From: Styela clava
Lineage: Eukaryota
Direction: 5' to 3'
Length of the DNA: 64,000 bases
Assembly (NCBI RefSeq): GCF_964204865.1
Contig: NC_135264.1
Location: 11,966,001-12,030,000, forward strand
Below the pieces are notes generated by a model, which searched no databases, was not told the DNA's origin, and was given only the letters and a program-made list of their open reading frames with translations. Both the position numbers and the translations under genes were made by a program. Positions 10,347 through 44,626 of the stretch are shown here, one piece after another; the stretch's first letter is position 1, and every line of letters begins with the position of its first letter.

Positions 10347-13300
10347 ATGTGGAGTTCTCGACTACCAGTGGTAGTCTTATTTTTTCTTTTCCGTTCTTTT
10401 GTCGGATCAACAAATGTGAAATTAGAGAATAATGGATACAAAGGATTACTAATTGCTATTCATCCTACCGTTCCGGAAAGTTCAGCATTGATTCAGGAAA
10501 TAACTGTGAGTTATTGATAGAATGTCTTCCTATAAAATCTGTTAGATTAGAAAAATGGTGTATGTAAACAAATTTGACTTTAAGATTAATGTTTTTTTTC
10601 ACAGAAAATGTATATTTTTGTTCATTAGGACGCATGGACAAGCGCATCAGAAGCTTTATACAAAGCAACTAAACATCGCGCGTATTTCAATATCATTACA
10701 ATACTGGTGCCGGCAACATGGACCAAAACTTCTTATCCTATATCAACAGAAGAGACTTACAGCGAGGTAATATGATACATTCAAATCTCTTTCCTTAGTT
10801 ATATTTTGTTGTTGGTATAATTCGTCAACAAGATTTTTATCGCTTGATTCCGGCACGCTTTGCAGCCGATCCACAAGCTTATGCCTTATGTAATGCCCTC
10901 TTTCGTATATGAATTTGTGTTTTATTGCTATTTGCTGTTATGTTTAATTGCATACATGTGTCACAACCATCTTTTCAGGCCGATGTAGTGATTGAAAGCG
11001 GTTCCATATCAGCCCCTTTCACGGAACAATACGGAAGTGCATGTGGCGAGCCAGGAAGCAAAATCCATACCAGATATAACTACTATACTGACGATGACGC
11101 TGTTACAAATTTCGGTCAAAGAGGTAAATTGTAACTATAAATGATAAGGACATAGATTTTTTTAGGCTTTTTTATTCTGAACCCAAGAAAAGACAAAAGA
11201 CGATGGTACATATAGGCCGGTCTATTTGAAAACAAATGCGAGCCTGAAAGTATTAATCTAACCCTTTTCAAGTCAATTAAATAGCTTTTATTAATCTTAG
11301 CAGAAGGATTTGTCTTTTCTGCAAACTTGATAATAGTGGCCGAGATATTTAAGTACTTTTGGTCTGGTTCAAATTTTCCCTGAATAAAGTTTTAAAATTT
11401 TTGATTTTAATAACAAAACCAAATGTAAAATAGAAAGTAAAAGTAGTGCGTTTTACATTCAAGTAATTTTTAATTCCAGGTAAAGCTATTGTTCAACAAT
11501 GGGCACATTACCGATATGGCATATACGACGAGACTTCAACAGAGTATACGAAGCAAAATGGAGAACATCAAGCATCAAGGCAAATAGAATAACTTTCCTA
11601 TACATATACAGTAATTGAAATTGAAAGTGGTTAAAATTAACTAAATTTATAGTCATAGTTTTTGTGCTTCAACTCTTTTGTGTGTCTGGTGTCATAGAAA
11701 AGTAACTAAGTATATTACGATGGTACTGAACACTGAAAATTTGGGGCTCCATAAGTGTGTGCACCAATATAGATAACTAATTTTGTTTGCCTATACTTTA
11801 CATCAAGTTGTGTAAAGAGACTGAAATCTATGGGCCACTTGACTAACACAGACAGCCCCTGAACTTGTAATAGAACTAAAATAGAAAAATCGGAATCAAA
11901 TTATACCAAATCCTAACCTGGTAAACATACTACGTGGGTACCAAATATTTAACAGGGAAATCAGAAAGAAACCTGTTTGCTTCAAAGTGTTTGTGCTCTG
12001 GTGTTGGGTGTAGAATACACGCTTAATTTTTGTTTGAAAAATTAAGGTGTCCAGAATCTGTCAGTGGATTAGTTGTCAATGTTGAGAACACTGCTACGAC
12101 TTGTGCGTTTGATGAAAATACCAATACTTACACAGATGATCAGTGTGTTTTTTTACCACAAGAAAATACAGCTGGAGTTAGCACCACTCTTTCGTGTTAC
12201 CAGTATTTGGACAATGTAAATATTTTACATATTTTCAACTTATAATACTCTAAATTTTCTTTACATTCACATTTTTTGCACCTGCACCTTTGAAGTTGGA
12301 AAAAATAAACAGATAAATAAGAAATATTGTCGCAACTACCAGGACGCGTTCCTCTAGTTTATTTGATCATTTGTTTCCTTGGTAATAGCGCACCTATAAA
12401 AACTACACTGAACTCAATATCGTGTGATTTGATTAATGATGTCATTCAATAGAGATATTCTTCACAATTGCCCGATCCCCAGCAGTAAAACTTTTTATGC
12501 ACGCGCAACTATGGTGCTATAAAAAAATTATTCACATTCTAAATGGAACACATTCCAGATAAAAGCCCCAACAGTTTATGACACTCGTATAAAGTTATAA
12601 CAGAATGTAATCCACGTGATAAGATACGTCATTTTTAGGCATGGTTGGCAAGGGTCAAAGGTGACTATATCACACTATTCAGCTTTGTAATTATCGAACT
12701 CGGAATGAGGACATACTTTGAAATACAAAACTATGTTCGCTTTACTATTTTGGGCAATTATTTATCAAGTTAACAATATACACTACGTTAGTTGAATTTG
12801 ACAGTAAATATTCTTTATATTTAGGTTGTCACATTCTGTCACGACCAGGACCCAACCAATCCGAACGGTCCTAACGTCCATAATTCAAATGCAAAGAATG
12901 AACAAAATCGACTTTGTGACAGAAAAAGTTCTTGGTATCACATTTTACAACATGACGATTTCGTGAAAGGGAGTAATCTAGCAAATGATAGCATTACTGA
13001 CCTAACGCCCTCGTTCAATTTTGTCAAAATGGAAGAACATCCAAGATATGTTCTCATTATAGATGTCTCAAACAGCATGAAGGGGGTAAGACCTGAATGT
13101 TATACGACACCATTTGAAATAAATGATAAAAATATTAAAAGAGAAAGTACTAACGACACTAAGCATTTTTCCTTTTTCCCTTTGAGTAAATTATTTTTGC
13201 TAGAATATCTTGTTGCATGAAACTAATACTATCATGGTATCATCTCACATAATATCTCATCACAAAATTCCGTTGCTTTTTATTTTTAGCTCAGATTACA

Positions 13301-16300
13301 AACGTTCAGAACAGCAGCAAGAGAAATGATAATGAATTATCTACCATCAGGAAGTCGAATAGGAATTGTCGAGTTTTCTTCAAACGCTGATATATTGAGC
13401 TATCTGAAAACTATAGAAACTCAAAATGATCGTGAAGATTTTGTGAATTTGCTTCCCACCATTACTCAAGATTTCACAAGCATTGGAGATGGATTGCTTA
13501 AAGGAATTGAAGTAATTATAACACACGTTGAAATTCGCTCCCTTAATTTCTCAAATATAGATACTTGTTTGAATGACGGGGTTTTCTAGTAACTGATCGT
13601 ATTTTGATGAAAAGTATCATGATTTAGTTTCAGATTTATTGAATTTTCAGTCGAAAAATGAATAGTAGAAATATTTTAAGTTGTGACAAGATATATTTAG
13701 CGTCTTTTTGATAAGTACATTTTTAAATGGCTCAATCCAGCAGTGTGTAGTATATTGTTTGATTCAATTAGCAATTACGTAATCATTACCTAACAGGTTT
13801 TGGAGTATGGAGGTGAAAGCGCTGCAGGAGGAAATCTTATAGTCTTAGTTGATGGGAAAGAAAATGAACCGAATTTCGTCGACATGATGTTTGATAGCAT
13901 CGTAGGAAAGGTATACACATTATTTGGAAATCCCGACTTCACCATTGTTATGCGTTGCATTATTCCTAGGAAATTGTAAAACGAGCGCGTGAAATGAAAT
14001 TTCAACGGTGCTTCTTACTTGGAAATCAATGTTTACATTCAACTCGTGACTACATTTACCTTTTCTGCGTTCGTTTACATGACCTTATGGCTTATTGAGT
14101 ACTTTCAAAATTGTGGACAATGAAAGCTTTTTTGGTCTGGTTACCAAGTAACATTTGGTTTGGTTGCCGAATTTAACATTTTTTGGATGCATCAAATTTT
14201 ATTACCTATAGAACTTTTTTGCACAAAAATTTACATGACATTTCCAGGGAGTTCATGTCAGTACAATATATTATGATGAAACCGATGGAGGAAGAGAAAA
14301 AGGACTTCAACAACTTATAACAGAAACTGGTGGAAAATGGGTTTTTGTTGCCGACGAAAACGATTTAAATTCTTTGACAAACGCTTTTATTACAATGGTC
14401 CAACCAGAAGATGGTGATACTACAGCACAAGTTCTTACTGTAAAAATTTGATTATTGAAGATTATACCGTTTATAATAAAAATGAAAGCTTTCAAAAGAA
14501 GACGTACAAACCCAAACACTCATTCGATTATTCGAAAAAACACTTAAGATTTGCCAATAGCAAGCATATGGCCTAATCAATAACAATTTACATGTTACTA
14601 TATACTGAGTATGGCCTATTTTTCGTCGATTTTTGACTGTGTTCACAAATCTTCGTAGGAATACGACATACGTTGGAATACGACATGGGTATATTGAACC
14701 CTAAACTTCACAAATAATATTTGAATTTCAGATCGAAAGTTATGAGGTGAGCATACCATCAGGAGCATATCAATCATCTGTATATTTGGATCAAACAATT
14801 GGAAAGAATACTGTTTTTTCATTTTCTTGGAATTCTGGCAACCCAGATTTGAGCGTAAGACTTCAAAGCCCAGATGGTTGCGAGTTCACCCATTCAAGCA
14901 TTGGACCAACTTCGAATTGTGGAAATACCGTGAGCTCAGAAGCCAAGGGATTTAATACAATATCGTTCAATATTTCTGGTATTGCGAAGGTAATAATTAC
15001 TACACATTAAAAAACAGGTTGCTCTACTTTTCAGATTGTATTAAAGCAAATGGTATCCCATGGATTGCGACGTCTATTTACCTGCCAGACATTTTTCAGT
15101 GATCTGAATAATAAAAAATTGGGATCGAATAAAAAAAAGTAGTTTTCGATTCAGTATATAATTATTGTATGTATGAAAACGACAATTTAATCATGTAACC
15201 ATACAAATTTGAGTCGCTTTGGAATTTGTTAAAAAATATTTGCCCCGTACAATAAATGCTTTTAGTCCCTATTAAAACCAAGTATTCGAAGAATAACACT
15301 ACTTAATGACAGGAAGGAAACTGGAAATACATCATAGAACCATCCTTTGGTTCAAAGGTCAATATTCAAATATCATCTTCAGCAGCGGATCAAGATGTTG
15401 AACCAATAATGATAACGCCATTCCTAACAACATCAGAATCTAGTTCTGTAAAGGTACTGCGGGCGAAAGTAAGTGTTCATATTTTTACAATCCTTTAATT
15501 GAAGTCAATAGCTATTGTAAGTTTGTAACTTAATCACTGATTGCCGCATCACAATTTTCAGGTTTCAAAAGGGTTGCTACCTATTGCTGGGGTGAATGTT
15601 GTAGCAAAAATTTCAAAACCAGATAAAAGTGTTGTCACTATTGATCTTCTCGATAACGGAGCGGGTATGAGTAATTTCTATGGTGCTGTCTAATATATAC
15701 TGCGTCACTGAAAGTCGAATTGTTCTTGAAATTCCTTACTAAAATATTCAACTGAGAGACTCATGTCGAATGGTAAAATGGATGTGTCTTGAGAAAACAA
15801 CACGACAATCCACATTCTTCAGAATTCTGTTCTTTTTCACGTTTTTGACACAATACACTTCGATTGGCAACACTCTTTTTATTACAATAATATACCATTT
15901 GCTGAGTATCACAGTTATAGTGAATCTTTTAAGGGGCGGATCAAAAAATGGATGATGGAATATATTCAAAGTCTTTGACGGATATTACAACCATCAACGG
16001 TCGATATAGTGTAAAGGTAGTAAATATTTGGTTATAATGAATATAAATGAATTTGAAGGATATTTATACCATGTTATTCGCTTCCTGTCACATATTTTAA
16101 TTTTGAATATTAGGCCTCAGTCTGTTTGACGTTTTTCTATCGTTTTCAATTGAGGGAAGAATATATGTAAAATGTTGTCGCAAAACTCAATAATTTTTAA
16201 TATTTTTTCATATATCTAGATTGAGGCAACTGCATCAGGCACATCTGCCAAAATAAACGGAAACACGATGTCCTTTGCAAATTACAACTATGGTGTTGTC

Positions 16301-19300
16301 CTTGACGATGGTATGGCAAATTCGATATTTCACAAACATTTAGAATAAGAATTAGGCTTTATTAAAATAAGATTTGAAGCAGAAAATGCATGAATGAATT
16401 AGTTTCAGCATTGAAATCATTGCGTGTCCGGAAAACTCGCCGCATGATATTTCGCCGTAAGGGCATTTCGCTGTAAAACAAGTATTTGTGATAAAAAGAC
16501 AGTGAGGTTTATAGTGTTAGGGTATGCTCTTAAATAACGAATCTTTTCTAAATATAAAGGTACTTCAAAAACCTAACTGTTTCATTACAAATACTTGTTT
16601 CACAGCAAACTGCTCTTGCGGCGAAATTTCATGCGGCGAATTTTGCCAGAACCAAAATCATTGAGTCTCACAATCTGGTATCGTCATTAATCAATAAAAG
16701 CAAAATTTATAATGACAATTTGGTGCGGTATGCAGATGGTATGGTGCGGTAACGTTACTCATAAATTGAATATAAGAAATCATCGTTTCCCAATCATTTA
16801 GGTTCTGTGAAGTTGAATCCAAACGGCTTGCCAGATTCAGTAGAATCAAACAGTATTTCTGTTACTGAATTTAGTAGATCTCTCTCGATGGTCGGCTTCA
16901 CTCATTCTGGGTAAATATGGATAAAAAATATTCTAGTTGAAACCATTGCGAATCGTATTGATAGAATAATTTCACCCGAAAAGAAAATTGAAAAATTCAA
17001 AGATGAAGTGCTCTCACACCTTATTCAGCTTATAGCAATTAGTGTTTCTGGTTTCGACTGGTTAATTATAGTTTCGTAATAATAATTATTCATATTTTTT
17101 ACTTATATTAGTTTATATCATTTGTAGCGCATCCGGAGGACCAGATAATATATCGCCATGTAAAATTATTGATCTCGAAATCAAACAAGCAACCGAATCC
17201 ACAAACAAAATCGACATTTTATTTACTGCTCCGGGAAACGACTACGACGTAGGAAATGGTGGGTCTTGTATTATGATCAAAAATTCCAATTGAATAAAAT
17301 GCAAATTGAGTACTGTAAGTTCGAGGGTGACCACAAACTAATATTATTTTAGCATGTTATTTATTCCAAGCTGTAACTACTTTTGCGATGGGAAAAATAC
17401 AATATTAAAACGTTTTTATTTCAGCTTTTTATTATGAAATGTTTTACACATTCGAAGCATCCACCGATTTGCTTAATCTCGGTCAGTCGAGAAATGAAAC
17501 AACACGTGTGGTTTTAGAGGATGATTTCTTACAAGGAAGTTTGAAAAGTCCTAAAAAGTTTGGAGAGATTGAAACTATGAGATTGGCGCTTGTGTCTGTG
17601 CCTACTATAGAAGGATTTTACACGTAGGTTCTCATCGTGGTTAGTTTTATTGCTTTGTTTGCATTATGTGCATGTTACCCGCCCATAGTTTGCTACATAT
17701 TTGCTACGCTGCAAAGTCAAGTTACGAAGACAGAATACGAGAGAAAATAAGTACGTGACTCATGTGCGGTTCCATTCTTACCTTTTTCTTGGAACTAAAG
17801 TTGCTACATATTGTACGTTGCAAAGTCAAATGCGAACGAATGTAGGCTTATAGGGAGAGATTAGTAATTATCCGTGTTCCCACTAAAGCTATATTTAGGA
17901 CACCCATCCTAAACGCCTACGTGAATTCAAGCTGCGAATATTGAATACGAGAGAAAATAAGTACTTGCTTAACTGGCGCTCTTGTGCGAATCCATTCTTA
18001 CCTTTTTCTTGGAACTAAGTTAAACAAACAAATGCAAACAAGTGCTTTTTGCAGAGTCAGCTTAGTTGTGCGATCAGCGGACTTAGAAGGCAATGTATCG
18101 CCGATATCTAATATTGCGGCTACTGAATATGTCGTAGGTAAACCAGTAGTGATAGCAACATCGACCAATTCAGTATTTTCAACCTCCATCAAAGTAACAC
18201 CAGTATCAAAATCTACGTCGATACCGAGTAAACCAGAACCATCAAGTGAGTTTAAATTCATATAAATTTGGTTACTATTAGTATATTTTTTTAGACACAA
18301 AACTAGGATTATCAGTGGATGTGAGGTGTAATTTCTGTTTATCTTTTGTGAATCTTAAATATTCCAAATCAAGGATTTTATGAAGAAAATTTTTGCATCA
18401 CATGGAATCCTGTCTCACGCTAATCCTATTTGTCTTCAATATCAAGGACAATTAGTAGCTTTGGGGTCGAAGACAAGCTAAAGCTAATGATAAATCTGTC
18501 TGTGATAAGTCAGAGGTCGATGACCAGAAAGTTCATTTGTCATTCATCAAACGTCACAAGGCGAAGAAGACAAAATTGTCAACTATACTAATGAATTTTA
18601 AATAGAGCAAAGTGAAACTAGCTAATCAAAGTCAGTAAGATCACGTATTATTCATGAACAAACAGACGGTTTTGAAAACTTTTGAAACTAAATAGCGTGA
18701 TGTATATTGCAAAATATGCCTATAGGGTAAGGCAAAGTTCAAAACTAGTATGTTACTGCATCGATGACGACACTATTGAAGTGAATGAATGGAAGATATG
18801 AATAAAATTATGTAGAGCGTTTGTACCTTATGTTTTGATTAGTACATCGCGCGAGTTACATTAGAATTTTCTATATTTACCCTGGAGTTTTGAAGCAGTA
18901 TTACTAATCCATACCTGTTAGTTAAAAACTCACCTTTGCTAGGAAAGATTTTACACTCAAATTATTTTTAACAGATGGACTTATCATTGGACTTTCTGTT
19001 TCGATTGTAATAATTGTCATTTCCGGTAAGTAATTAAATGTTTCTTCATTCGAACTACTGACTAAATATAATATATTATTTAATATGTATATTAATTCTA
19101 GTATTTGGGGCGAATAAGTTGAGCTCATATATTATCAGAACCTAATAAATAGTCTATATGAGGCATTACTGAATCATGGGGTATCGTAGCACCATGTGAA
19201 TGTTCTTGTTTTTTCCGACTCGGAACCTCATGTGTTTAGTTCTTCTTCATATTATACATGTTTATATTCAGTTGTAGCGGTGTTATTATGGTTATGTAAA

Positions 19301-19597
19301 CGACACAACCGTAAAAAGGCAGTCAGTCCAAGGGAGAGGGTCTATCAACCAAGCGAATACGACAAGGCCACGGATCTCCCTCGTGAGTGCCCACCGGATT
19401 ATTCGACAGTCAATGCACCTTATCAACAACCTTCTTACAGGTATGAAGCATACCAACGACAACCTTATTATCAAACAAATGATTACGAATTCGCCCAAAC
19501 AAACCAATCTGCCTATGAAACTCCCATACAACAGCAATATTACGAAGATGTCGATAATGCCCCGCCGCTTCCTCCTCGTCCACCAAACCGTGGGTGA
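10347..19597 (+). CDS. CLCA: CLCA-family paralog B: membrane-anchored, HEXXH degenerate (QQWAH), long Tyr/Pro-rich cytoplasmic tail
   Basis: 20 exons: 10347-10505, 10629-10766, 10979-11123, 11480-11579 (GC donor), 12047-12215, 12825-13085, 13290-13511, 13797-13910, 14248-14439, 14732-14989, 15313-15468, 15562-15664, 15934-16016, 16220-16310, 16802-16910, 17128-17258, 17425-17623, 18055-18245, 18975-19025, 19272-19597. Frame is open throughout. Motifs: VKLENNGYKGLLIAIHP, VQQWAHYRYGIYDE, DVSNS (MIDAS), LLDNGAGAD..DDGIYS, FTAPGNDYDVG, TM segment GLIIGLSVSIVIIVISVVAVLLWLC then KRHNRKK. Confidence 0.92.
16423..16654. mobile_element. MITE with ~85-bp TIRs and 9-bp TSD
   Basis: Left arm (tcgccgcatga.atttcgccg...aaacaagtatttgt) pairs with the right arm; aaatcattg on both flanks (16414-16422, 16655-16663). 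Confidence 0.8.
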
Positions 19598-20893
19598 GGG
19601 AGTCCAGGTCTCCAGCAAATGCGGATCATTATTCAAAATAGAATAGAATAGAACACAAAATAGAGTACAATTGTAGAAGATGTAGAGTCCTGTCAAGTTC
19701 GGCGCAAAAATATAGTTCCATCGATTACTAATCTTCAAATTAGACTTATTATTTCTGAATATTCCCACGTCAAATTTCGTTTTTTGATGTATGTGGAAGC
19801 GAATGACTAAAAGAAAACCATTGTTGAAGTTATGCCTTTGTTATACATATTATTCAAAAAAAATTGGAAAAAATACCGCGTTCTGTCTGTAATTTAATGT
19901 GACTGGTATTTTGTGACGGTATCAATATAAGTGATAAATGTTTCTTAGAGTGTATTTTTACTTTCGTACAAGACAAATTTCGATAATGTCTCTTATTTTA
20001 TAGATTTTTGATTTTTTCATTTGGTAAACGCTATCTTGATATTGAATTTTAGTTATTAAATAATTAATTATTAAAAATTGCGACAGAGTGAATAATATTT
20101 TTGGTGCACATTTTTTATTCAGATAGCTATTTGTTTTACCAAACCTAGTTTATTGTAAATGTACTTTTTCAATAGTTCATTATTTAGTATGAGTCACGTC
20201 AAGTCGTTATTGGAATGGTATCTTGAATAAATTTTAGTTGTTATTCACGGTAAGTGCTCACGTAAAAGTCGGTGTTGATTACGGAATTTATTTTTGTTCT
20301 TTGAAGTTTAATCTTCGTTTTTAAGTCCACAACCCTTCAACTTTATTTCAGCACAGTTTTGTGAAAGCATTGGTGAAAAAAATCCCAAAGTACTGGTGTT
20401 TGATCATTTCCCAAATCCCAAAATGAAATTGCAAAAGAGTCAAGAGATACGGTATTATTGTGGTTCATTATATATCGGTTGACCCTATACCTGACTTCAG
20501 TTTAATGCAACACGGTGAAAAAGTACTTCACCCAAAATATAGTGCAAAAGATCTGTATAACAAAACGTTTATTGCAAATAAAGTAACTGATTAGTAATAT
20601 CCTTGCTATTTACATGTAACTCTATTATATTTAACTACACATCACAAATGTTTTCGTTGAATCACAAATTGTCCTCGTTTATAGGAGGAACATATATATA
20701 TATATTTCATAAGATTTTAGTTACACACGAGTTGCTATATATATATCAATATAAATGATAATAAAAATGAAACAGTGAGCAGTTATCAACAAAATACAGT
20801 TAAAATGAACAGTATATTGAACTAGAAAACAATACTTGTTTGTTAGAAGTGCAAGTCAGTATTGCGTGAAGTATTACTACTGAAATGTATTTA

Positions 20894-32142: not shown

Positions 32143-35100
32143 ATGGATCCAATATCAATACGAAAAGATCTTGGAGTGGCAGATTATTTGTCATTTGTTC
32201 GTAAGTATATGAATTGAATCTTGATTTTACACATTGTTGGATGAAGAAAAACGAATAAAAGTAACACACAGCATTTCGATTAGATTATGGAAGTTACAGT
32301 ACACAGAAAAATCAAAATCTTTGGACCTAAAACATAGATGTACATTGAACATCATATATAACATAAATATATATATATATATTATAATATAATACATAAG
32401 TAAGATTTTTAATTCTATCTTTCTCAGTTCTCATGGCAATATCTACAATTATTGGAGTATATTTTGCATACAGGGATAGAAACGATGCCACAACTAAAAA
32501 TTACTTTTTCGGGGGAAAGCAAATGAATCCGGTAAGGTATTTTTTCTCTAAAGATGATATCTTCAAAAATAAGTTTCTTTGATTCTCATAATTTAAAAAA
32601 AAAGTGAAAAAGAGTTTATTAAAAAAAATTGGAAAAAGCGATTATATTTTCACATAGAAACTACATTTCTTGCGATATACATTTTTTTTTGGAATTATTA
32701 AATTACAAAATTTTAAACTTTTTCAGGTTGCTGTTGGCCTTTCACTTGCTGTGACATTCCAATCAGCTATTGTTGTGATTGCGACTCCCGCCGAAACTTA
32801 TATATCCGGGACTCTCATGATGTGGGAACCAATTATGCGAATTCTTGCCGTCCTAATCGTTCTTCTGTATTTAATACCGTTATATCATCGCTTACAACTA
32901 GATACAATTTACCAGGTTTGAAAAAAATAATTACATTTTATTCCCAAATTTCTAAAATAGTGGGATAATATTAAGGATTACAGTATACCAGCCAATTTGA
33001 AAACAATGAAAACTAGAAAGCACCAAAAAGAAGTAAAACCAAAAAAATTGGACAAAAAAATATTACTAGAAACTAGAGATGTTTGAAGATAATTCTTCAA
33101 TCAATGATTGTGATGACACAACATTAAATTGCTTACTGTTTGATCAGATTCTGATATCGTTAGAGTACAGCTGTAATAAATATTACCTTCAACATATACG
33201 ATATATATTTTACTATTTTGAAATTTATTATTTCAAGTACCTGGAACTGCGTTACAACTCTACAATGAGGAGAACAACATCGGCCCTTCTATCGTTAGGA
33301 ACGGTATGACAACTCTAAATTTTATTTTTCACAGCATCAAATGGTTCGTTACTCGATTCTTTTCTTCATTATTTTTCTGTGCATTTTTGAACAATCCTAC
33401 AAACTTCAAACAATTCACGACTAAGTATATTTATTTATTTCAGCTATTTTACGTCGGATCTGTTGTGTATATGCCTGCCGTGGCTCTGAACACCGTGACA
33501 CCTCTACCAATGGAATGGAGTATCATTTTAACTGGTGTAATATGTACATTGTATACAACGTTGGTAGGTAAACAATTTTATATCGAACTTAAAACGAGAA
33601 TATCGGTCAGAGACCGAAGACTTATCGATTGAAAGTTAGGGGATCCCCAAAACAGCGCTTTTACTCCATAGCGACACCTTGTGTCTCATCACTAATTAAT
33701 TAATAACTCGCTAATTATACGACATAATTCATCCAAAATCAATAGGCTTCTGGTTCGACATATGATGAATGCGCATGCAAAATCTGGAGCAGATTCGATC
33801 TCGCTTTCGTGAGATAACGCGTGCATCTAACAGACAGACAGACAAACAAGCATGCAAATACTTATCAACATACTTAACGATTAAAATCGATAAATAATAA
33901 GAGTCCTAAATAGGTAAGTATACTAGTGAGTCATGATGAAAACCCTACCCGGGCCAACATAAATTTTATCTTAATTAAAAGTTTTTGCTGTTTTGTAGTT
34001 CCAAATGAACTGATTCCTTTTTTGAAACGCGTCCTAAAATTATCCTCAAGGCTGTGTTCCGTAATAGGGAGGAATGAAAGCGGTCATTTGGACAGACGTT
34101 ATACAATCTGGCATCATGATATTGGGGATGGTCGCGGTTTTCATTAAAGGGCTCATGGTTGTTGGCGGGTTTGATGAAATGTATGGTGCAATTGAGAGAG
34201 GTGATCGGCTTACAGCTTTCAGGTAAGCTCAACTTTTATTCTACAATATTCCTACTAAGGGCTACCAACCGTCCCGGAATTGACGTCAGGTGTCCCGTGC
34301 CCCGGACTGGGATACGGTTGTCCCGGAATTAACTGACAATCGAGCGTTCTAAAATAGAAGTCCATCTAACTGTCTGTGTAAGCGTGCCGGCTTCGCGCAA
34401 ACTGGAAAAGAATGTAGCCGGATCACGCGAATATTTTTAAAAATGAAAATGATTGTTAAAGAGTGTTAATGATTGTTAAAGAGTATTATGAACGCGCTTA
34501 GGACCAAAAGTAGAAACGAGAATATCGGTCAGAGACCGAAGACTTATCGATCGAAAGTTAGGGGATCCTCCAAAACAGAAACTGCGGTTTCGATTCGAAA
34601 AATTCTGCAAACTCGAACTGGATTGTTTTGATTAGTTTTCAGCCAATATCAAAAATGTAGAAAACAATAGCCAACTACCCATGTCGTCGTCGAAATACTA
34701 CTCGAGGAAATACTTTTATAAAGAATTCTGCAAATCCGATTTGGATTGTTTCGATTAGTTTCCAGCCAATAGCCTATTTACCGATCCTTTATTTTGTGTC
34801 AAATACAACGGCGCTAACCCGGGTTGCGACGGCTATTCAAACACAGCCTAGCGATATTTTGGTGAGGAATTCTGCAATCCCCAACCTGAATGAGGGATAT
34901 GGACATTGCTTAAACTTTAAAAGAGTAATTATAAGTAACGAGATACGATCTCGCGGAGTGTATCCTTCGCTCTGACTCAATAGCATGGAAAATTTCTCGA
35001 AGGAAACTTGCGCATCGCGACGACGTCAAAGTTACAAGAGAAATATGGACAATGCTTAAAGATTAATCACGAGATACGATTTAGTGGTGTGTATCCTTCG

Positions 35101-38100
35101 CTCTGACTCACTAGCGTGAAAACTTGCGCATCGGTCACGCACACACACATTCAGCGCGTCCCGAAAATCTCTCGCTTTGTAAAAATCCAGATCTCTTCAT
35201 CACTAATTAATTAATAACTCGCTAATTATACGACACAATTCATCTAAAATCCATAGGCTTCTGGTCCGAGATATGATGAATGCACATGCAAAATTTGGAG
35301 TAGATTCAACCACGCATTCGTGAGATATCGCGTGCATCTAACAGACAAACAGACATACAGACAGACAAATACCTATCAACATACTTACCGATTAAAATCG
35401 ATAAGTAATAAAATCGATAAGTAACAAACTAAACTTTAATCTCATCAAAGTTGAACTGATGATGAAATTGAACTTTCGTACCGTAGGTCACGTAATGAGT
35501 TTATCAACAAAGACAAATAACTTCTTGGAGCGGAAAAATCACAAGAAAAATACAAATTTAGATTCCAGAAGGACTGATTATTGGGTGATTTTTGTTAAAT
35601 AAATCAAATTGCACATTACTCTTTGACGCGCAGCGGGCACTGTTGCTTTTGATGTATTTTCGTATTTCACAAGCTTCTGTTGCATCAATTTTCAAATTCA
35701 GACATTAAGGTGTCCCGGAATGGCTTAACGCTAAGTTGGCAACCCTATTCCTACTGTATACATCACATAATAAATTTAACCCATCGGTTCGTCTTTTACT
35801 CTGTTCTTTCTTAGTCTATCTTATTTTTCAAACTTTTTTCAGATTCGACTATGGTATAATATCGCGACTTTCACCAGGGGGTATTATTGCAGGAATATTT
35901 TTCATGAGTTTGGGAGGCCTTGGAGTAGAACAGGCGATTGTGCAAAGATTTCAAGCTTGTGAAACAATAGGAAAAGCCCGTTGGTAATTACGAATTTATA
36001 GCATATATCGTGTGCATCTAACAGACAGACAAATACCTATCAACATACTTACCGATTAAAATCGATAAGTAATAAGTAGTTTATAAATTGATGAGATGTT
36101 GTAAATTTCTCTTGCCAAATTTCCTTCTGCCTAAGTCATTTTATAGATTCGTACTTTATTTGAAGTTATATGCTGTTATTCTTAGTAGCAAAATGGGCAT
36201 CAATATGTTTCACAAAAAAATTTGCTATAAAAAAATAAATAACTTTTCCGTTTAATTCTCCACGCAGTGCTCTGCTGGTTTATGTGGTGCCAACAATCAT
36301 CATAGGAATGACAAGTGTCGGAAATGGGTTGATAATGTACGCATACTATGAAGGATGTGACCCTGTCAAGTCGGGAAAACTTCAAAATATAGATCAAGGA
36401 ATCCCGTATATGACTTTAGAGATTTTTGAGAATGTACCGCGGATGGCAGGACTTTTCGTTTTAACCATATTTAGCGCCAGTCTAAGGTAATATGTATAAA
36501 TTTTAAAGCGTGCATCCAACCATGGCAACCGGGCCATAATTTGCCCACCCCTGGTCTAATTTGCGTATCTTCAGATCGAGAACCCCACAGCGAACTATCA
36601 AGTGAATCTTTAACTTAAAAATAGTACAATTCAACTTACAGTTGCATATAGGTGTTATGTGCAACAAACCCAACAACTACTTTTTCAACCTTTCTTTTTA
36701 TAACACTTTTCAACGATTTTTTAGTACAATATCATCCTGTCTCAACTCATTATCTGTTTTAATATTGGAAGACTTTATTGTTGCAAAATGGCCTTCATTG
36801 ACTGAGAGAAGAAAAGTTGCTATTGGAAAAATTACCGGTGAGAAGTTTACCTTGAACGATGGATCATGAGTATTTCGAAACCGAATTTATAAATATAATT
36901 TTACACTGTGTAATTATAGGTGGAATTCTCGGGATAATTTTAATATTATTGGCATTTGGAATATCAGCATCAAAAGCGAATGCATTTGAACTTGTGTATG
37001 GATTTACCGCACTTACATATGGACCTGGTATTGCGGTGTATTTTCTAGGATTTTTCTTCCCTTGGGCGAATGCTATGGTGAGTTCTTTATATTTAGGACA
37101 TAAATATTCTTTATAACAACATAATTGACGATATATTTTCGTCACATTTTAGGGCGCAATGATTGGAATGTTAACGGGTTACATGCTACTGGCGTTGTTG
37201 TTTATAGGTGGGTTGATCAATTTTGTAAATAGTTTTACTGTTTTTATTCTAGGTGATCCAAATACTTGGCTATCTTCCATCGTCGACTTGGTTTAAAATT
37301 TAGTAATATGAATAATGGATTTTGAACATCTGTTTGAAGAAAATGCAAAAACGATTGACTGCGGTACCCAACGCAAGCGTTGTGATTATTTGTGTTATTT
37401 TTATGATGTTTTTATTTTAAAAATGTAGTGCACCATCATGCATTGGCAGAAACGCTCACCTATGGGCAATAATGAATTTATGTGCGAAATACGACTAAAA
37501 TAGTACAATAGCAATGATATAAAGCAAATTGTTTTCAGGGCGACAGTTTTTCAACCCAAATCCATATCGAGCTAATATACCCACTGTGTCAACCAACTTA
37601 TGTCCAGCAAATCATACCTTAGATGGCTTCGATTACAATGTTACAACATCAGATACGTCGACAATTACAGCTATAGAGGAAATCCAAGAGTAAAACTTTT
37701 GAATATAAAGCTTGAATTTGTAATTAAATAGAATAATGTCTTTTATATTTCACGACATAACGCTTCTTTTTCATTCAGTGCAAGATCGTTATTTTTAGGA
37801 AAAACGCTATCCCCTTGATCAGCACTCAAACCTGTGTCTTGCGTGATGCCGTTGAAACTTTTGCGTAGTTTCTAGTCAGATAATATAAAAATAAATTATA
37901 TTTTAATTTTACATGGACACTCGTTTTACCCCTTTCAACAAAAAATGATTCTTGCTCAACAGAAGAACCTTTCTCCGAGATATACACAACATCAACTTCA
38001 ATTTTCTTATGGTGATTGGCTTTGTGACTACGATTGTTGTTGGAATCATCGCCTCCTTCATTTCGGGTATTGTACCACACTAACTTATTAGTAACCTATC

Positions 38101-39678: not shown

Positions 39679-41956
39679 ATGAGTTACACACTTAGTTTTC
39701 TGTAAGTATTTAGATGTCTATTTCATTCCGCCTTTTCGTTATGATAGCAGTTTCTCGAAAGGATCGTATTAGATATAATGTAGCTAGTCAGCTTGGCTAT
39801 GCGTCGTAATATAACGATGCTCTAGTATTTACGTGGTTACATGAGTTTGCTTGTTATTTATAGATTCACTGTTATGATAGCAGTGACTTAACTGTTGTTT
39901 AACCTTTTTTTTAGTTTTTTCCTGATTGTGTCGTGTGGCGTAGACATAGGTAAGTAGCATGCTATTTCTGTTGCTAGCTTTTGTATTTTATTTTCTAATC
40001 CAAAACTGATTTTATAGGTTGCAGCTCCAACGTTCATGGATTCTCTTCTCCTACGTATTGTTCTTCAAACCTGAATCCGTGTATGAACGGTGGTGTGTGT
40101 GTCAACTATGGTGGTTCTTATAAATGTGGTTGCCCTCGTGACTGTAGTGGTGAACACTGCGAGCTCTGTGATGATGGTACGTGCTGTTCTGCAACTCGTG
40201 TACGCTAAAAATAAAATCTCATATTGGTTCACATTTGCTTTCAGGTATCGGTCCAAAAAAGGGAGCATGCTTTCCAAATCCATGCAAGCGGGATTGTAAA
40301 TGTCACGAATCGTGCCAACACGCTGGTGGATATTATTGCAGGAGTGCTTCTGGTTATCTCGGCAAAAATTGCACCATTCGTAAGTATCTGTCAATAAGTA
40401 GCCCTGGCTACGGTACGTAAATTACTCTTGGAATCCGTACTCATTCAGCAATGCCTTCTCTCCGCTGCGAGACTAATCGCATCGTGTTTTCTGTGTCGGA
40501 AAGCTTTGTCCGTGAATACGACCTTGGACTGAGAAACAGCTTCATCAACATCGTCAGAAGTCTTGGTGACACCAAAGGATGCGAAGGTATTTGTTTCGGT
40601 TTAGCAACGCAGACGTGTAAGTTAAACCGAGTACTAAAATCGCGATTTTTATTGCATTTCAGTCGCGGCCGCTGTCAATGGGTTTTACGAGATTCAAATC
40701 CCAATTCCATTTAGTACATGTGGGACGGAAATGACATCAATCGGTGGACAGGTTGTCTTCACTAATCAGATGTGGTTCAATCGTCGTCTTGCGAACTCCA
40801 TGTTCGATATGCCTATTCCTGTCGCTGAATTTCAGTGTAGATACGAAAGGCAATATAGGGTGGTGACTTCACTCCGCCCAGTGTAAGTAAAACTATTTTG
40901 GTAAAAAGTCATTACTTTGACCTACCTAAAATTTCATTATTTTCATTCAGGGTAAGCACACCAGCTGTGATAACCGGCCGCCAATCGATAACACCTAGCA
41001 TTTCGTTATGCAAGGTGCCCGCGTGTCCAAGCACTTGTCCTACAAATTTTGCTGTGAGTGGAGGGGCTGTCTACACCGTTGGAGAAATGATGCATGTTAC
41101 AATGTCACTTGATGTGAGTAGAGTTCTTCCCCAGTTCTGCAAAAAGTATTTTTTCAGTTGGAATGAGAATTATTGTTGATTTTATTTTGCAGTCCGGAAA
41201 CCAGGTCACTGGTATCGACGAAATGTATTTATCATGCAGCCCTGTGCCATCCACGGCCAATATTGTTGGAATTGTTAAATCTGGATGTGGCACCACAGCT
41301 GGGCTTCCATGTGAAATAACCACCAGCGCCGTTGGCCATACCGTTTGTGTATCGTTCCAGACCCCGAGAAGCATGTCATGCCAAGAGTTTTATATCCATG
41401 CAAAATTGATTTCCTGTGACAGAGGAAGTGTAGGCGTAAGTTTTGTTTTGTTACGTGTAGGTTACCCTTAAAGCTATGAAGCTAATCGCTGTTCGTCATT
41501 TCAGACTTGCTCGGACAATGCCAGCGTCGACAGATGCCTTCTATCGCGTAAGCGAAGAAGTGTCGATTCTGCTCCTATTGCGCTCGGACCAATTCTATTG
41601 CTGAATGGTTCGATTGGAATGCCCAACATCCACCTTAACGGTATGGAAGACGTTGAAATTCCCGATAGAAAAATTGGTCTTGTACTAAGACAAAATGATG
41701 AAGAAATGCCGAGAACCGTAGAAGCACCATCGAGTCGTCCTTTAGGTAAGATCTTCATGCCCAGAACGTTTGGGATGCATCGATCGTCATTGGCAAATTA
41801 ACTGACATTTTGTTTTTTATCGTTTTAGGTATCGACCAACCTACCCTGCTCATGATTGTCATTGGAACTGTACTCTTTGTTGTCATTGTTTCGTTGATTC
41901 TTGTTTTACTTCGTAATCGTTCTCTTGGTGTTACTTTAACGACCAACAAATCTTAA
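39679..41956 (+). CDS. EGF-EGF-ZP domain protein with furin site and C-terminal TM (vitelline-coat/uromodulin-like architecture)
   Basis: Exons 39679-39701, 39915-39949, 40018-40176, 40245-40379, 40449-40586, 40663-40882, 40951-41113, 41193-41435, 41505-41745, 41829-41956. EGF domain NPCMNGGVCVNYGGSYKCGCPRDCSGEHCE; second EGF-like domain; ZP-N motifs (FSTCGT, FQCRY); ZP-C motif FYIHAKLISC; RKRR furin site then hydrophobic patch IALGPILL; TM segment; AATAAA at 41971. Confidence 0.88.
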
Positions 41957-42208
41957 TATTGGTTTAAATGAATAAAACTAAATCTTCACGTGGCGTTTAT
42001 TGTAAATTTAAGATGGGAGCTGTTCATGTCTTTTATTCTCCGGTAAATTCGTAAAACCGGACCCCATCATGGGTCAATGTTGACTAACCTAGTTCGGTTA
42101 GAGTTTTAGTAATACAGTATTCAACTCTTATAGATATTACAATATCGAATCTAGTCGCAGACTAGTGATGATTGAGCTGCCTGATAAAAAAAAAAAAAGA
42201 CAACTTCC

Positions 42209-42485
42209 AAAGCATCACCGGGACATTTGGGCGGGGCGCGGAGCATCTTGTCAAATGCGGAACGCGTGACAAGCGCACACATGCAAGCCGACAGAGCGGA
42301 ATTCAAGAAATCGTCTATCATGAGAGTAGGCCACTGCATGCCATACAGCATTACCGGGACGTTTAAGTCCACCGGGCGGGGCAGCACGTCAAAATCTGGA
42401 CGTATGGCAAGCCCACACTTACAAGCAGACGGAACGGAATTCAAGAAATCGTTTTTTCATGACACCTGAGGGTAGGTCACTTCAT
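42209..42485. repeat. Two diverged tandem copies of a ~137-bp GC-rich unit
   Basis: agcat.accgggac, gggcggggc, cggaattcaagaaatcgt..tcatga and gtagg.cact each occur twice, about 137 bp apart. Confidence 0.7.
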
Positions 42486-42696
42486 TTTATCGTAGAGTGG
42501 GCCAATCCATGGGGAATCCTACGTGATCGTTCTAAACTTCAGAGATTGATGCTTTATTCTTATGACAATTATCCACTCTCATGAACACTTACAAGGTAAT
42601 ACGTGCAATGATCTGTCATGGCGTTATCACAATTGCAAGCCTATTATATTTATTATCCGCCTTTCGGACTTATTTCCAAGCTAAAGCCTATTATGA

Positions 42697-43025
42697 TGTG
42701 GCTCGGCGGTCTGGCGCATCGTGCTAAGCGTTAGGAATACGATCGCCACCGCATCTCTGATTAACCTCCGTGGGATTGCAGGTTCGAATCCCAATGCGGG
42801 GATGATCATGTGTGAGAGGATTGCTGGACTCCTCGCAGCCGTAGAGTGGTTCACGTAACCCCATGCGGGGATGATCCTGTGCGAGAGGATTGCTGGACTC
42901 CTCGCCGCCGTAGGGTGGTTCACCTAACCGCTTCACCATCAAGTCCATGCTTCCGAAAAAAAAAAAAAAATAACTAGCTGACTAATCCCATCCCTCTCCC
43001 CTGGGATAAATATGTAAATCCTATG
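42697..43025 (+). mobile_element. tRNA-derived SINE with an internal ~60-bp tandem duplication
   Basis: A-box-like tggcgcatcgtgctaagcg and B-box ggttcgaatccc; atgcggggatgatc..gagaggattgctggactcctcgc.gccgtag.gtggttcac occurs twice; 3' part shared with 710-1378. Confidence 0.75.
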
Positions 43026-43107
43026 TTCGAAGCAGTTCACGTCTCCCTCCAGTGTACAGTCTATTTTCACTGAAGCATTAATTTATTTTATGACATCATA
43101 TAGACTT

Positions 43108-43117
43108 CCTTATATGG
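43108..43117 (+). promoter_or_regulatory. Consensus CArG box (SRF site) upstream of the myosin regulatory light chain gene
   Basis: CCTTATATGG matches CC(A/T)6GG, about 1.5 kb upstream of the ATG, at the start of a CpG-richer stretch. Confidence 0.55.
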
Positions 43118-44626
43118 AAACGCCCGTATCCTTTGATGGCGGAGTGAGGGCGTCGAATTTTTCTGTCCGAGCGCGGCTTCGGAATATTGTTTAATTTGAT
43201 ATCGTATGTTGCTTCGTGTGTCACGATTGGTAACGATTCGAATTATAACGGGTTTAATGAAACTTCTAAATAATGTATAGATCACGAAAGTCGTATTTTG
43301 ACAATTTTGTTTTAATCCTGAATCAGTTGTTTTGTCCGTTCTGCCAATTGACGTTCAGACGTTAGCTAGATTGAACTTCTGAACTTTGTCCTAGATTGTG
43401 TGAGGAAAATTCGTTCAGCGTAATATTTATCGTATTGTTTAACCCTTTGACAAGTGGGTGTTAGATCAAATTACCAAGTACAAAACTTGACACGGGCTAT
43501 TTCTGTATTTGTTTAGTGATTTAGCAAGACTGGAATCTCAGGATGTGTGTGTTCACACAAAAATGACAAGATGCCCTAGAAATCCTGTTCTTATTTAGTA
43601 CTAGTTCAGTAGTTTATGTTCTCTTCATGTTGCTGACGTTCTGGTCAGTATAACCAATTTAGTTCTGGTGCTGTTTATAGCTACATAATGTTAGATACCG
43701 GTAGTCTACTGAAATTTGTCTTAGATTTTTAACAGCCTATTGGTTATGCTGTTTTTTCATTTATAAGATTCTTCAGTCCTGTCAGTACAGCAGTACTTAT
43801 CTTCTCATGCACAGTATAAGCGAGGCATATTAACTGTAAAATTACAATATCTGTAGTCGAAGTTGTGTTATTTTTATTTACTGTTGAAATTGGAAAAAAA
43901 ATCTAGGCTGGAGCCAAGAGAATACAGTTAAATTAAAATTTTAAATTGTTTTGAAAAAATGTGTATTAAAAGAATATTTCAAGAGTTAAAATTGTCCTTC
44001 TACATGTCCAATTTATGAAAGTAAAATTTGCTTATGCAGGAATATATAGGTTATTTTCAAATTAATTACAAATCTCGAATTCTGGAATATGATACTCCTC
44101 CACTATTCTGATATAGGCATCCCATCAATGAGTTATTTTTATTAATCTTGTCTGGCTTGGATTTGATTATCAATTAAAAATTGCTAAGTCTGTAAGTTCA
44201 GAATCGGAATATTTTATTTCCATTTACTGTTCTTCAGTTCTATGAGACTAAATTCTCAACAAATCATATTATTTCAATCTTTATACAATGATATACTTGC
44301 AATCTATTATAATATGTGATTTGAAAGCGCTATCTTTGTTCGTCATTTTTGGTTTTTAGATCTATATATTCAGATATTTAAAAAAAAACTTCAATAATTA
44401 ACATTGCTTACTGTTTAATAATAACTAAAATAAGGAAAATCGGAATGAAATTATGGCCTAACCCTAACATGGTACACATACTACGGGAGTACCGAAATTT
44501 TTATATATCACTAGAGCCAATTTTCATTTCATTTTGTGTCTTCAGAAAACCAATTTTAATTGAAATTCTGTCTTTGTATACGCAGCATATTTTATTATTA
44601 GATTTCGAAATCACTAACACTTCAAA

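What the first reader, a model, noticed from the sequence alone, without database searches (positions are those of the whole stretch)
10347..19597. Receptor-like CLCA pseudoprotease beside active CLCA proteases: a candidate protease/sensor system
Seen in sequence: CLCA-B has an open 20-exon frame, signal peptide, VWA MIDAS motif DVSNS, FN3 domain and a TM segment. It alone lacks the catalytic motif and alone has a long motif-rich cytoplasmic tail. It lies head-to-head with CLCA-A (start codons about 2 kb apart) and tail-to-tail with CLCA-C, both of which keep HEWAH. Established: mammalian CLCAs are self-cleaving zinc metalloproteases, secreted or TM-anchored with short tails, linked to mucus processing and TMEM16A regulation. 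Inference: one paralog has become a non-catalytic surface receptor or adhesion sensor, possibly cleaved in trans by or oligomerising with its active neighbours, as with iRhoms or inactive ADAMs. I do not know of a described CLCA of this type, but I cannot search the literature.
Basis: partly seen in the sequence, partly recalled or inferred. Interest (0 to 1): 0.85.

Follow-up and report, generated by a model that had tools for sequence, protein, structure and literature searches.

The report
Catalytically dead membrane CLCA paralog
One gene in a tandem cluster of CLCA zinc-protease genes of a sea squirt (Styela clava or a very close relative) has lost its catalytic residues yet is still spliced, transcribed and under selection; "dead" CLCAs were described as a class in 2013, so this is a new example, not a new kind.

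Summary
Gene B (10347-19597, + strand) is a 20-exon open CLCA gene of 1053 or 1065 codons. It reads QQWAH where its neighbours A, C and D, and E just beyond the window, read HEWAH. It keeps a complete VWA MIDAS site, a 25-residue membrane segment and a 99-residue tail rich in Pro, Tyr and Gln.

RNA-derived contigs from four runs in two studies remove 12 GT..AG introns exactly. They carry the transcript through the membrane and tail exons into the 3'UTR. Variants in those contigs give pN/pS of about 0.33 (p 0.008). B is therefore not a decaying pseudogene.

The loss is wider than the motif. Seven of 43 protease-domain columns that are invariant in 19 other CLCAs are changed, and the Met-turn Met is Ser. 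All six conserved cysteines and the cleavage loop remain.

- CLCAs with substituted catalytic sites are already published (Lenart et al. 2013).
- This genome has a second one (RQWAK, another chromosome).
- Long tails also occur on active CLCAs.
- The tail has no detectable homolog.
- Adjacency to active paralogs is tandem duplication, not evidence of a protease/sensor system.

Transcription of exons 1-5, which include the QQWAH exon, could not be checked. No ortholog was found. The scan had already noted the motif and the tail on this same window.

The parts
10347..10505 (+). Exon 1: start codon, signal peptide, start of the CLCA_N domain
   Evidence: Pfam PF08434 positions 1-29, E 1.9e-6. Homologous to the first exons of A, C and D. 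GT donor. No RNA check.
10629..10766 (+). Exon 2, CLCA_N
   Evidence: PF08434 positions 33-76, E 1.8e-8. AG/GT sites. No RNA check.
10979..11123 (+). Exon 3, CLCA_N. Carries Y118F and T135R, changes at otherwise invariant columns.
11480..11579 (+). Exon 4, with QQWAH (11494-11508) in place of HEWAH. The downstream H, G, D and E of the zinc motif are kept. The donor is either GC at 11580 (preferred) or GT at 11544; both keep the frame.
   Evidence: No RNA check of this exon.
12047..12215 (+). Exon 5: cysteine-rich part of the protease domain. The Met-turn Met is replaced by Ser (TTLSCYQY, 12183-12206).
12825..13085 (+). Exon 6: end of CLCA_N and start of VWA, with the MIDAS motif DVSNS at 13062-13076
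   Evidence: Its length plus that of exon 7 equals the 483 nt that precede 13797 in the spliced contig of run X1.
13290..13511 (+). Exon 7: VWA, with the MIDAS Thr (FTSIG, 13473-13487)
   Evidence: PF00092 E 2.4e-5.
13797..13910 (+). Exon 8: VWA, with the MIDAS Asp (LVDGKEN, 13845-13865)
   Evidence: RNA junction 13910|14248.
14248..16016 (+). Exons 9-13 (14248-14439, 14732-14989, 15313-15468, 15562-15664, 15934-16016): end of VWA and the beta-sheet-rich region
   Evidence: All junctions are GT..AG in RNA contigs of X1, some also in X2 and X3.
16220..16310 (+). Exon 14: counterpart of the autocleavage/inhibitory loop (MSF|ANYNYG, 16268-16294)
   Evidence: RNA junctions. Alignment to the G694|A695 site of mammalian CLCA1.
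16802..18245 (+). Exons 15-18 (16802-16910, 17128-17258, 17425-17623, 18055-18245): FnIII-like region (FTAPGNDYD at 17222-17248) and a Ser/Thr-rich stalk
   Evidence: RNA junctions. Alignment to other CLCAs. Pfam fn3 not detected.
18975..19025 (+). Exon 19: first half of the membrane segment
   Evidence: Junctions 18245|18975 and 19025|19272 in X1, X2 and X8.
19272..19597 (+). Exon 20: second half of the membrane segment, the 99-aa cytoplasmic tail (19298-19594; PPDY 19391-19402, PPLPPRPP 19562-19585) and the stop codon
   Evidence: Contigs of X1, X2, X3 and X8 cover it with no differences and run on into the 3'UTR to at least 19749.
19441..19441 (+). Minor alternative acceptor (19025|19441). 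It shifts the frame and gives a 1025-aa product without the tail.
   Evidence: One contig of one run, with 29 nt on one side. Weak.

Best explanation
Gene B encodes a type-I membrane glycoprotein of the CLCA family. It keeps the family's fold and its metal-dependent binding module (a VWA domain with a full MIDAS site) but has lost zinc-protease activity. It is therefore a pseudoprotease.

Shown:
- The first zinc ligand and the general base are both Gln.
- The Met-turn Met is Ser, and several cleft-lining residues that are invariant elsewhere are changed.
- The six conserved cysteines, the MIDAS residues and the cleavage-loop region are kept.
- The mRNA is spliced through the membrane and tail exons.
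- Coding variants show purifying selection.

Inferred:
- The protein cannot cleave itself and stays as a single membrane-anchored chain, unless another protease cuts it.
- It acts through binding, by VWA/MIDAS to a surface or matrix partner or by CLCA-CLCA oligomerisation, not through catalysis.
- The Pro/Tyr/Gln-rich tail (one PPxY, one PxxPxR, two YxxPhi) most likely couples it to WW/SH3 adaptors and the endocytic machinery, and so sets its surface level or turnover. A dedicated phosphotyrosine signalling role is less likely.

B arose by an old duplication within tunicate CLCAs and has evolved about 1.5 times faster than its closest paralogs.
For: - Motif and context.
- Open 20-exon frame with all acceptors AG.
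- Family membership: Pfam CLCA_N and VWA on single exons.
- Transcription: twelve GT..AG junctions and coverage through the stop codon into the 3'UTR, in contigs of four runs from two studies.
- Selection: 11 synonymous and 12 nonsynonymous variants over 374 and 1252 sites give pN/pS of about 0.33, binomial p 0.008; no variant in the 326-nt tail exon.
- Extent of the loss: 8 of 86 columns invariant in 19 other deuterostome CLCAs are changed, 7 of them among the 43 in the protease domain (Fisher p 0.03), against 0-2 for nine full-length control CLCAs.
- Met238 is Ser; six of six conserved Cys are kept.
- MIDAS D-S-S, T and D are kept, and the cleavage loop aligns.
- Identity per domain is only slightly below that of control paralogs, and closest to them in VWA.
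- Established knowledge: His156, His160 and Asp167 bind the zinc, Glu157 is the general base and Met238 forms the Met-turn in CLCA1 (bioRxiv 10.1101/2025.10.18.683246). E-to-Q in the motif abolishes CLCA2 self-cleavage (PMC10669480).
Against: - Transcription of exons 1-5, including the QQWAH exon, was not checked.
- The donor of exon 4 is ambiguous (GT at 11544 or GC at 11580).
- No ortholog was found, so conservation of QQWAH and of the tail across species is unknown.
- pN/pS rests on 23 variants listed by one tool output.
- The zero variants in the tail may only reflect shared haplotypes.
- The tail motifs are short and occur by chance at appreciable rates in Pro/Tyr-rich sequence.
- No binding partner, location or tissue is known.
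Confidence: 0.62

Rival explanations
1. Protease/sensor pair. B is a surface receptor whose ectodomain is cut in trans by the neighbouring active CLCAs A or C. The cut, or ligand binding, is passed on through tyrosine phosphorylation and SH2/SH3/WW docking on the tail.
For: - B keeps a loop that aligns with the CLCA autocleavage site and has the conserved Ala at P1'.
- Catalytically dead CLCA2 E165Q is cleaved in trans by wild type and co-precipitates with it (PMC10669480).
- The tail has PPDY, PPLPPR and 13 Tyr.
- B and A are head to head with about 2 kb between their first exons.
Against: - Adjacency is explained by tandem duplication: five genes here, and at least 12 in the genome.
- By the tree, B is not a recent copy of its neighbours.
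- P1 is Phe, whereas most CLCAs have a basic residue there (preprint 10.1101/2025.10.18.683246).
- No homolog of the tail was found.
- There is no canonical ITAM, ITIM, NPxY or Grb2 site.
- Long tails also occur on active CLCAs.
- Co-expression was not tested.
Confidence: 0.12
2. Decoy or dominant-negative partner. B joins the oligomers formed by active CLCA paralogs, or occupies their substrates through its dead cleft. It tunes their activity without signalling on its own.
For: - CLCA precursors self-associate, and the E165Q mutant still does so (PMC10669480).
- CLCA1 forms large oligomers (preprint 10.1101/2025.10.18.683246).
- Lenart et al. 2013 propose decoy or accessory roles for inactive zincins (PMC3650047).
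- The fold-defining cysteines are kept.
Against: - The cleft is degraded beyond the catalytic pair (Y118F, F175 lost, T135R, M238S). That argues against retained substrate binding.
- B is only about 35% identical to its paralogs, so hetero-oligomerisation is uncertain.
- Nothing was tested.
Confidence: 0.15
3. Gene on its way to decay. B is a redundant duplicate that lost activity and is drifting, and its transcripts are noise.
For: - B has the longest terminal branch in the tree, 1.45 against a median of 0.59.
- There are several hits to catalytic residues.
- A GC in place of GT lies at the ancestral donor of exon 4.
- No B-like protein was found in the protein databases.
Against: - An open frame of 3.2 kb across 20 exons with intact splice sites.
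- Correct splicing in four runs.
- pN/pS 0.33, p 0.008.
- All conserved Cys and the MIDAS residues are kept.
- The divergence is old, so a neutral gene would have accumulated stop codons.
Confidence: 0.07
4. B is still a hydrolase with a non-canonical centre: the remaining His, Asp and Glu plus water, or another metal.
For: His160, Gly164, Asp167 and Glu168 are kept.
Against: - The general base and one of three zinc ligands are lost together with the Met-turn.
- The single E-to-Q change alone abolishes cleavage in CLCA2 (PMC10669480).
Confidence: 0.03

Closest known systems
CLCA family members with substituted catalytic sites (Lenart, Dudkiewicz, Grynberg and Pawlowski 2013, PMC3650047)
   Same: CLCA_N domain with the HExxH positions replaced; the remaining architecture (VWA, C-terminal beta domains) is kept; loss is independent and lineage-specific; function unknown. 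E-to-Q and H-to-Q are single-nucleotide changes of the type that paper lists.
   Different: The QQ pair with the second His retained is not among the patterns that paper stresses for CLCA_N (first His to Arg, second His to Lys). Here the loss is shown together with loss of the Met-turn, RNA evidence and a within-species signal of selection. No tunicate case is mentioned there.
Human CLCA2, a type-I membrane CLCA (PMC10669480)
   Same: Signal peptide, CLCA_N, VWA, beta-sheet region, FnIII-like region, one membrane segment, cytoplasmic tail. B naturally carries the E-to-Q change that, as the laboratory mutant E165Q, abolishes self-cleavage while the mutant is still cleaved in trans and co-precipitates with wild type.
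   Different: CLCA2 is catalytically active, and its activity is required for its effect on store-operated calcium entry. B's 99-aa tail is the longest in its own cluster (A about 60, C about 36, D about 23 aa). B is about 31-33% identical to the vertebrate CLCAs retrieved.
Annotated but unstudied dead CLCAs with long tails in other phyla: Lingula anatina XP_013385433.1 (HHWGH, tail about 166 aa), Pinctada imbricata KAK3102098.1 (HQWGR, 64-aa tail with PPNY), Acanthaster planci XP_022080598.1 (YEWGQ, 52 aa)
   Same: Substituted motif, a membrane segment and a longer than usual cytoplasmic tail. One of them also has a PPxY motif.
   Different: The losses are independent, with different substitutions and unrelated tail sequences. 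None is characterised.
Non-catalytic ADAMs (such as ADAM22/23) and iRhoms, as functional analogies only
   Same: Membrane-anchored relatives of proteases that lost catalytic residues and act by binding.
   Different: Different families and folds. No evidence here for any comparable ligand or client. This rests on my own knowledge and on the analogy drawn in PMC3650047.

Membership tests
CLCA family (Pfam CLCA_N PF08434 plus VWA architecture) | N-terminal CLCA_N domain | tested here: met
   Exons 1-6 match PF08434 positions 1-29, 33-76, 78-125, 128-155 and 230-264. Exons 1 and 2 pass the gathering score on their own.
CLCA family (Pfam CLCA_N PF08434 plus VWA architecture) | VWA domain with a MIDAS site (DxSxS, T, D) | tested here: met
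   PF00092 on exon 7. DVSNS, FTSIG and VDG align with the MIDAS residues of other CLCAs.
CLCA family (Pfam CLCA_N PF08434 plus VWA architecture) | C-terminal beta-sheet-rich and FnIII-like regions | tested here: inconclusive
   Colinear tblastn and MAFFT alignment with full-length CLCAs to about residue 900. Pfam fn3 not detected on single exons.
CLCA family (Pfam CLCA_N PF08434 plus VWA architecture) | Conserved cysteines of the protease domain | tested here: met
   Six of six columns with conserved Cys keep Cys in B.
Active CLCA metalloprotease (metzincin-like, HEXXHXXXGXXDE plus Met-turn) | First zinc-ligand His and general-base Glu | tested here: not met
   Both are Gln, QQWAH at 11494-11508.
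Active CLCA metalloprotease (metzincin-like, HEXXHXXXGXXDE plus Met-turn) | Second His, Gly, and Asp/Glu of the extended motif | tested here: met
   H160, G164, D167 and E168 are kept.
Active CLCA metalloprotease (metzincin-like, HEXXHXXXGXXDE plus Met-turn) | Met-turn methionine (Met238 of CLCA1) | tested here: not met
   Ser in B; Met in 18 and Leu in 1 of 19 other CLCAs.
Active CLCA metalloprotease (metzincin-like, HEXXHXXXGXXDE plus Met-turn) | Self-cleavage at the inhibitory loop | not testable with these tools
   The loop is present (SF|ANYNYG). Cleavage needs an expression experiment.
Signalling receptor with a docking tail | Tail motifs conserved in relatives | tested here: inconclusive
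   No homolog of the tail exon among proteins of 59-187 aa. The Atlas gave nothing. Orthologs not found.
Signalling receptor with a docking tail | Canonical phosphotyrosine modules (ITAM, ITIM, NPxY, YxN) | tested here: not met
   None present. Only PPxY, PxxPxR, YxxPhi and YxxP patterns were found.
Signalling receptor with a docking tail | Ligand-dependent phosphorylation or adaptor binding | not testable with these tools
   Needs biochemistry.

The most novel reading that the evidence does not exclude
B is the receptor half of a CLCA protease/pseudoprotease pair. An active neighbouring CLCA cuts B's retained cleavage loop at the cell surface. The freed or rearranged ectodomain changes what the VWA/MIDAS site binds. 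The Pro/Tyr-rich tail then reports this through WW/SH3/SH2 adaptors. That would be a signalling mode not known for any CLCA.
Probability: 0.08. Interest if true: 0.7.

Novelty: new member of a known kind. Interest (0 to 1): 0.3.

Why it matters
CLCAs are linked to mucus processing and ion-channel regulation, and their non-proteolytic functions are still debated. A naturally dead, membrane-anchored, expressed and constrained CLCA with an intact MIDAS site separates binding from catalysis without any engineering. In a tunicate, which is open to experiment, it could be used to ask what a CLCA does without its protease. The value is that of a well-documented example. The class is already published, and nothing here shows a new mechanism.

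Tried and rejected
(1) Orthologs of B.
- phmmer of exon 6 against 1.84 billion representatives gave a best hit of only 59% identity, a 93-aa fragment that is barely closer to B than to A, C or D.
- A full-length search with the Clavelina protein P0006, and a search restricted to its N-terminal region, returned no B-like protein.
- Conservation of QQWAH and of the tail across species therefore remains untested.

(2) Tail homologs. There were none among proteins of 59-187 aa. The ESM Atlas gave only unnamed clusters below 0.9. Pfam gave nothing.

(3) Scaffold alignment. An alignment of P0006 plus all B exons (A1) was meant as a profile query. MAFFT scattered the fragments, so I did not use it.

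(4) Link between motif loss and long tails. It looked significant in a redundant sample. It weakened on the 50%-identity representatives: Mann-Whitney p 0.06, and Fisher p 0.23 at a 60-aa threshold. I do not claim it.

(5) Rfam on the whole window: no match.

(6) Steps left out.
- The joined 20-exon protein has no reference, so it was not sent to any database search, structure prediction or complex prediction. I assembled it only inside the sandbox from the window file, for frame checks, local BLAST against proteins already fetched, alignments and a tree.
- The careful tree did not finish, so the quick tree is reported.

(7) Reads were laid on 13750-19749, so the 5' exons, the exon 4 donor and any HEWAH allele are unchecked.
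Full report
WHAT IS THERE

The window is AT-rich (about 35% G+C) and intron-rich. Six-frame comparison shows four CLCA genes in it:
- A on the minus strand, from about 8396 leftwards and off the window.
- B on the plus strand, 10347-19597.
- C on the minus strand, about 29546 to 20900.
- D on the plus strand, from 53128 to about 62600.

A search of the whole assembly with Pfam CLCA_N places the window at contig C19:11966001-12030000 of a 377-Mb genome. It finds a fifth gene (E) just to the right, and further CLCA loci on contigs C9, C10 and C17. At least 12 genes have a readable motif exon. NCBI proteins of Styela clava map to several of these loci at 97-100% identity, and to E at 95-100%. The genome is therefore S. 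clava or a very near relative.

THE GENE MODEL

Homology to the paralogs and to full-length tunicate CLCAs is colinear across B. I spent the one read-laying run on 13750-19749. Contigs of four runs from two studies, labelled with the species of the assembly, skip 12 intervals that all begin GT and end AG. One 2161-nt contig joins exons 8 to 18. Contigs of X1, X2 and X8 join exon 18 to exon 19 to exon 20 and continue past the stop codon to at least 19749.

The runs are only guessed to be RNA, but removal of a dozen introns shows that the contigs derive from spliced transcripts. In the long contig, 483 nt precede position 13797. That is exactly the summed length of my exons 6 and 7. It supports those two exons, and it also suggests that the contig breaks at the exon 5/6 boundary.

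With homology-based exons 1-5 the model has 20 exons, AG at every acceptor and no internal stop.

One ambiguity remains at exon 4. The only in-frame GT donor after the motif is at 11544 (1053 aa). The position that corresponds to the paralogs' donor is AAG|GCAAAT at 11580, a plausible GC donor. It also keeps the frame (1065 aa) and restores a good alignment to the conserved segment that ends in "RCP". I prefer the GC version but could not test it.

A minor alternative acceptor at 19441 appears in one contig of one run. It would shift the frame and remove the tail. I give it little weight.

IS IT A CLCA, AND IS IT DEAD?

Pfam CLCA_N matches exons 1-6 in order, and VWA matches exon 7. At the catalytic motif the paralogs read HEWAHYRWG(V/I)FDE. 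B reads QQWAHYRYGIYDE.

According to the CLCA1 cryo-EM preprint (10.1101/2025.10.18.683246), His156, His160 and Asp167 hold the zinc, Glu157 is the general base and Met238 forms the Met-turn. B has lost His156 and Glu157. In an alignment with 19 deuterostome CLCAs it also has Ser at the Met-turn position, where the others have Met in 18 cases and Leu in one.

Of 86 columns invariant in those 19 proteins, B changes eight. Seven of the eight lie among the 43 invariant columns of the protease domain: Y118F, T135R, H156Q, E157Q, W163Y, loss of F175 and S236T (Fisher p 0.03). Nine full-length control CLCAs put through the same test change 0-2.

By contrast, all six conserved cysteines are kept, as are the three MIDAS elements and a loop that aligns with the autocleavage site (SF|ANYNYG against, for example, SR|ANYKPG). 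Identity per domain is only a little below that of control paralogs. So the scaffold is maintained while the catalytic cleft has been let go.

The laboratory E-to-Q mutant of human CLCA2 does not self-cleave (PMC10669480). B carries that change and more.

IS IT ALIVE?

Three lines of evidence argue that it is:
- The frame is open over 3.2 kb and 20 exons.
- It is spliced correctly in independent samples.
- The differences between the contigs and the assembly within exons 8-18 are 11 synonymous and 12 nonsynonymous, over about 374 and 1252 sites. This gives pN/pS of about 0.33, and the binomial p for this excess of synonymous changes is 0.008.

The tail exon shows no difference in any of the four runs (Poisson p about 0.01 at the rate of the other exons). 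Shared haplotypes could explain that.

In a quick maximum-likelihood tree, B sits inside the tunicate CLCAs, near S. clava P0157 and the C/E pair (SH-aLRT 82). It has the longest terminal branch, 1.45 against a median of 0.59. B is thus an old, faster-evolving duplicate, not a recent copy of its neighbours.

THE TAIL

After a 25-residue membrane segment split over exons 19 and 20 (the same split as in A, C and D) come 99 residues with 15 Pro, 13 Tyr and 11 Gln. They contain one PPxY (PPDY), a PxxPxR (PPLPPR), two YxxPhi (YSTV, YEDV) and two YxxP. There is no ITAM, ITIM, NPxY or YxN.

It is the longest tail in the cluster but not the only sizeable one: A about 60 aa (its end fetched from outside the window), C about 36 and D about 23. 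The tail has no Pfam match, no homolog among proteins of comparable length and no informative Atlas neighbour.

COMPARISON WITH WHAT IS KNOWN

Lenart et al. 2013 (PMC3650047) state the following:
- Only 72% of CLCA_N domains carry HExxH.
- The loss happened about five times independently.

In my own sample of homologs, 15 of 94 had a substituted motif. This genome has a second one, RQWAK on contig C10. Another note of this scan (s1-829417) probably refers to that gene.

Some dead CLCAs of other phyla also have long tails: Lingula 166 aa, Pinctada 64 aa with a PPNY, Acanthaster 52 aa. On the non-redundant representatives, however, the association of motif loss with tail length is only a trend (median 55 against 28 aa, p 0.06), and nine active CLCAs have tails of 60-139 aa. 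No paper on tunicate CLCAs turned up in the library.

MECHANISM

The best-supported reading is a non-catalytic, membrane-anchored CLCA. It acts through binding by VWA/MIDAS or by CLCA-CLCA contacts, and its tail most likely governs trafficking or adaptor docking.

Trans-cleavage and co-precipitation of a dead CLCA2 with the wild type are published (PMC10669480), and B keeps the loop. But the only evidence specific to this locus is adjacency, which tandem duplication explains.

LIMITS
- Exons 1-5 are unverified by RNA.
- The donor of exon 4 is unresolved.
- No orthologs were found.
- The joined protein was never sent to a search, fold or complex tool because it has no reference. It was built only in the sandbox for local checks.

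VERDICT

The thing is a new, well-supported member of an already described class of catalytically substituted CLCAs. The receptor/sensor reading remains a low-probability hypothesis.

Noticed in passing
window 16432-16644 (intron 14 of B): Inverted repeat with 65-nt arms, 86% complementary and 83 nt apart. It lies in a stretch where RNA-contig depth jumps to 300 or more in all four runs, with many loose ends. It looks like a multi-copy MITE-like element.
   Followed up: partly
G000:C10:17451097-17451399 (L002; L032/L033): A second CLCA of this genome has a substituted motif, RQWAKLRWGVYDE. Its membrane segment is followed by a very basic stretch (KKYRKKKREKKERKERE). It is probably the gene of scan note s1-829417 (HExxH lost, RKRR gained); I did not check the RKRR claim.
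   Followed up: partly
G000:C19:12031151-12040000 (L034), just right of the window: Fifth gene of the tandem cluster (E). It keeps HEWAH and is 95-100% identical to the S. clava protein P0159. D in the window is its close copy (about 90%).
   Followed up: partly
window 61700-62443 (+), gene D: Ser/Thr-rich, mucin-like stalk before the membrane segment, containing a near-perfect direct repeat of about 27 residues. B has a shorter Ser/Thr-rich stalk.
   Followed up: no
window 11580: The position that matches the paralogs' exon 4 donor is GC, not GT, in B, and a cryptic in-frame GT lies 36 nt upstream. Which one is used changes the protein by 12 residues next to the dead active site.
   Followed up: partly
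window 19025|19441: Minor alternative acceptor seen in one contig of run X1. It would give a 1025-aa isoform with a shortened membrane segment and an out-of-frame C-terminus in place of the tail.
   Followed up: partly
window 34001-36000 and 40001-44000: Stretches with higher G+C (0.39-0.43 against about 0.34) between genes C and D. Not examined.
   Followed up: no
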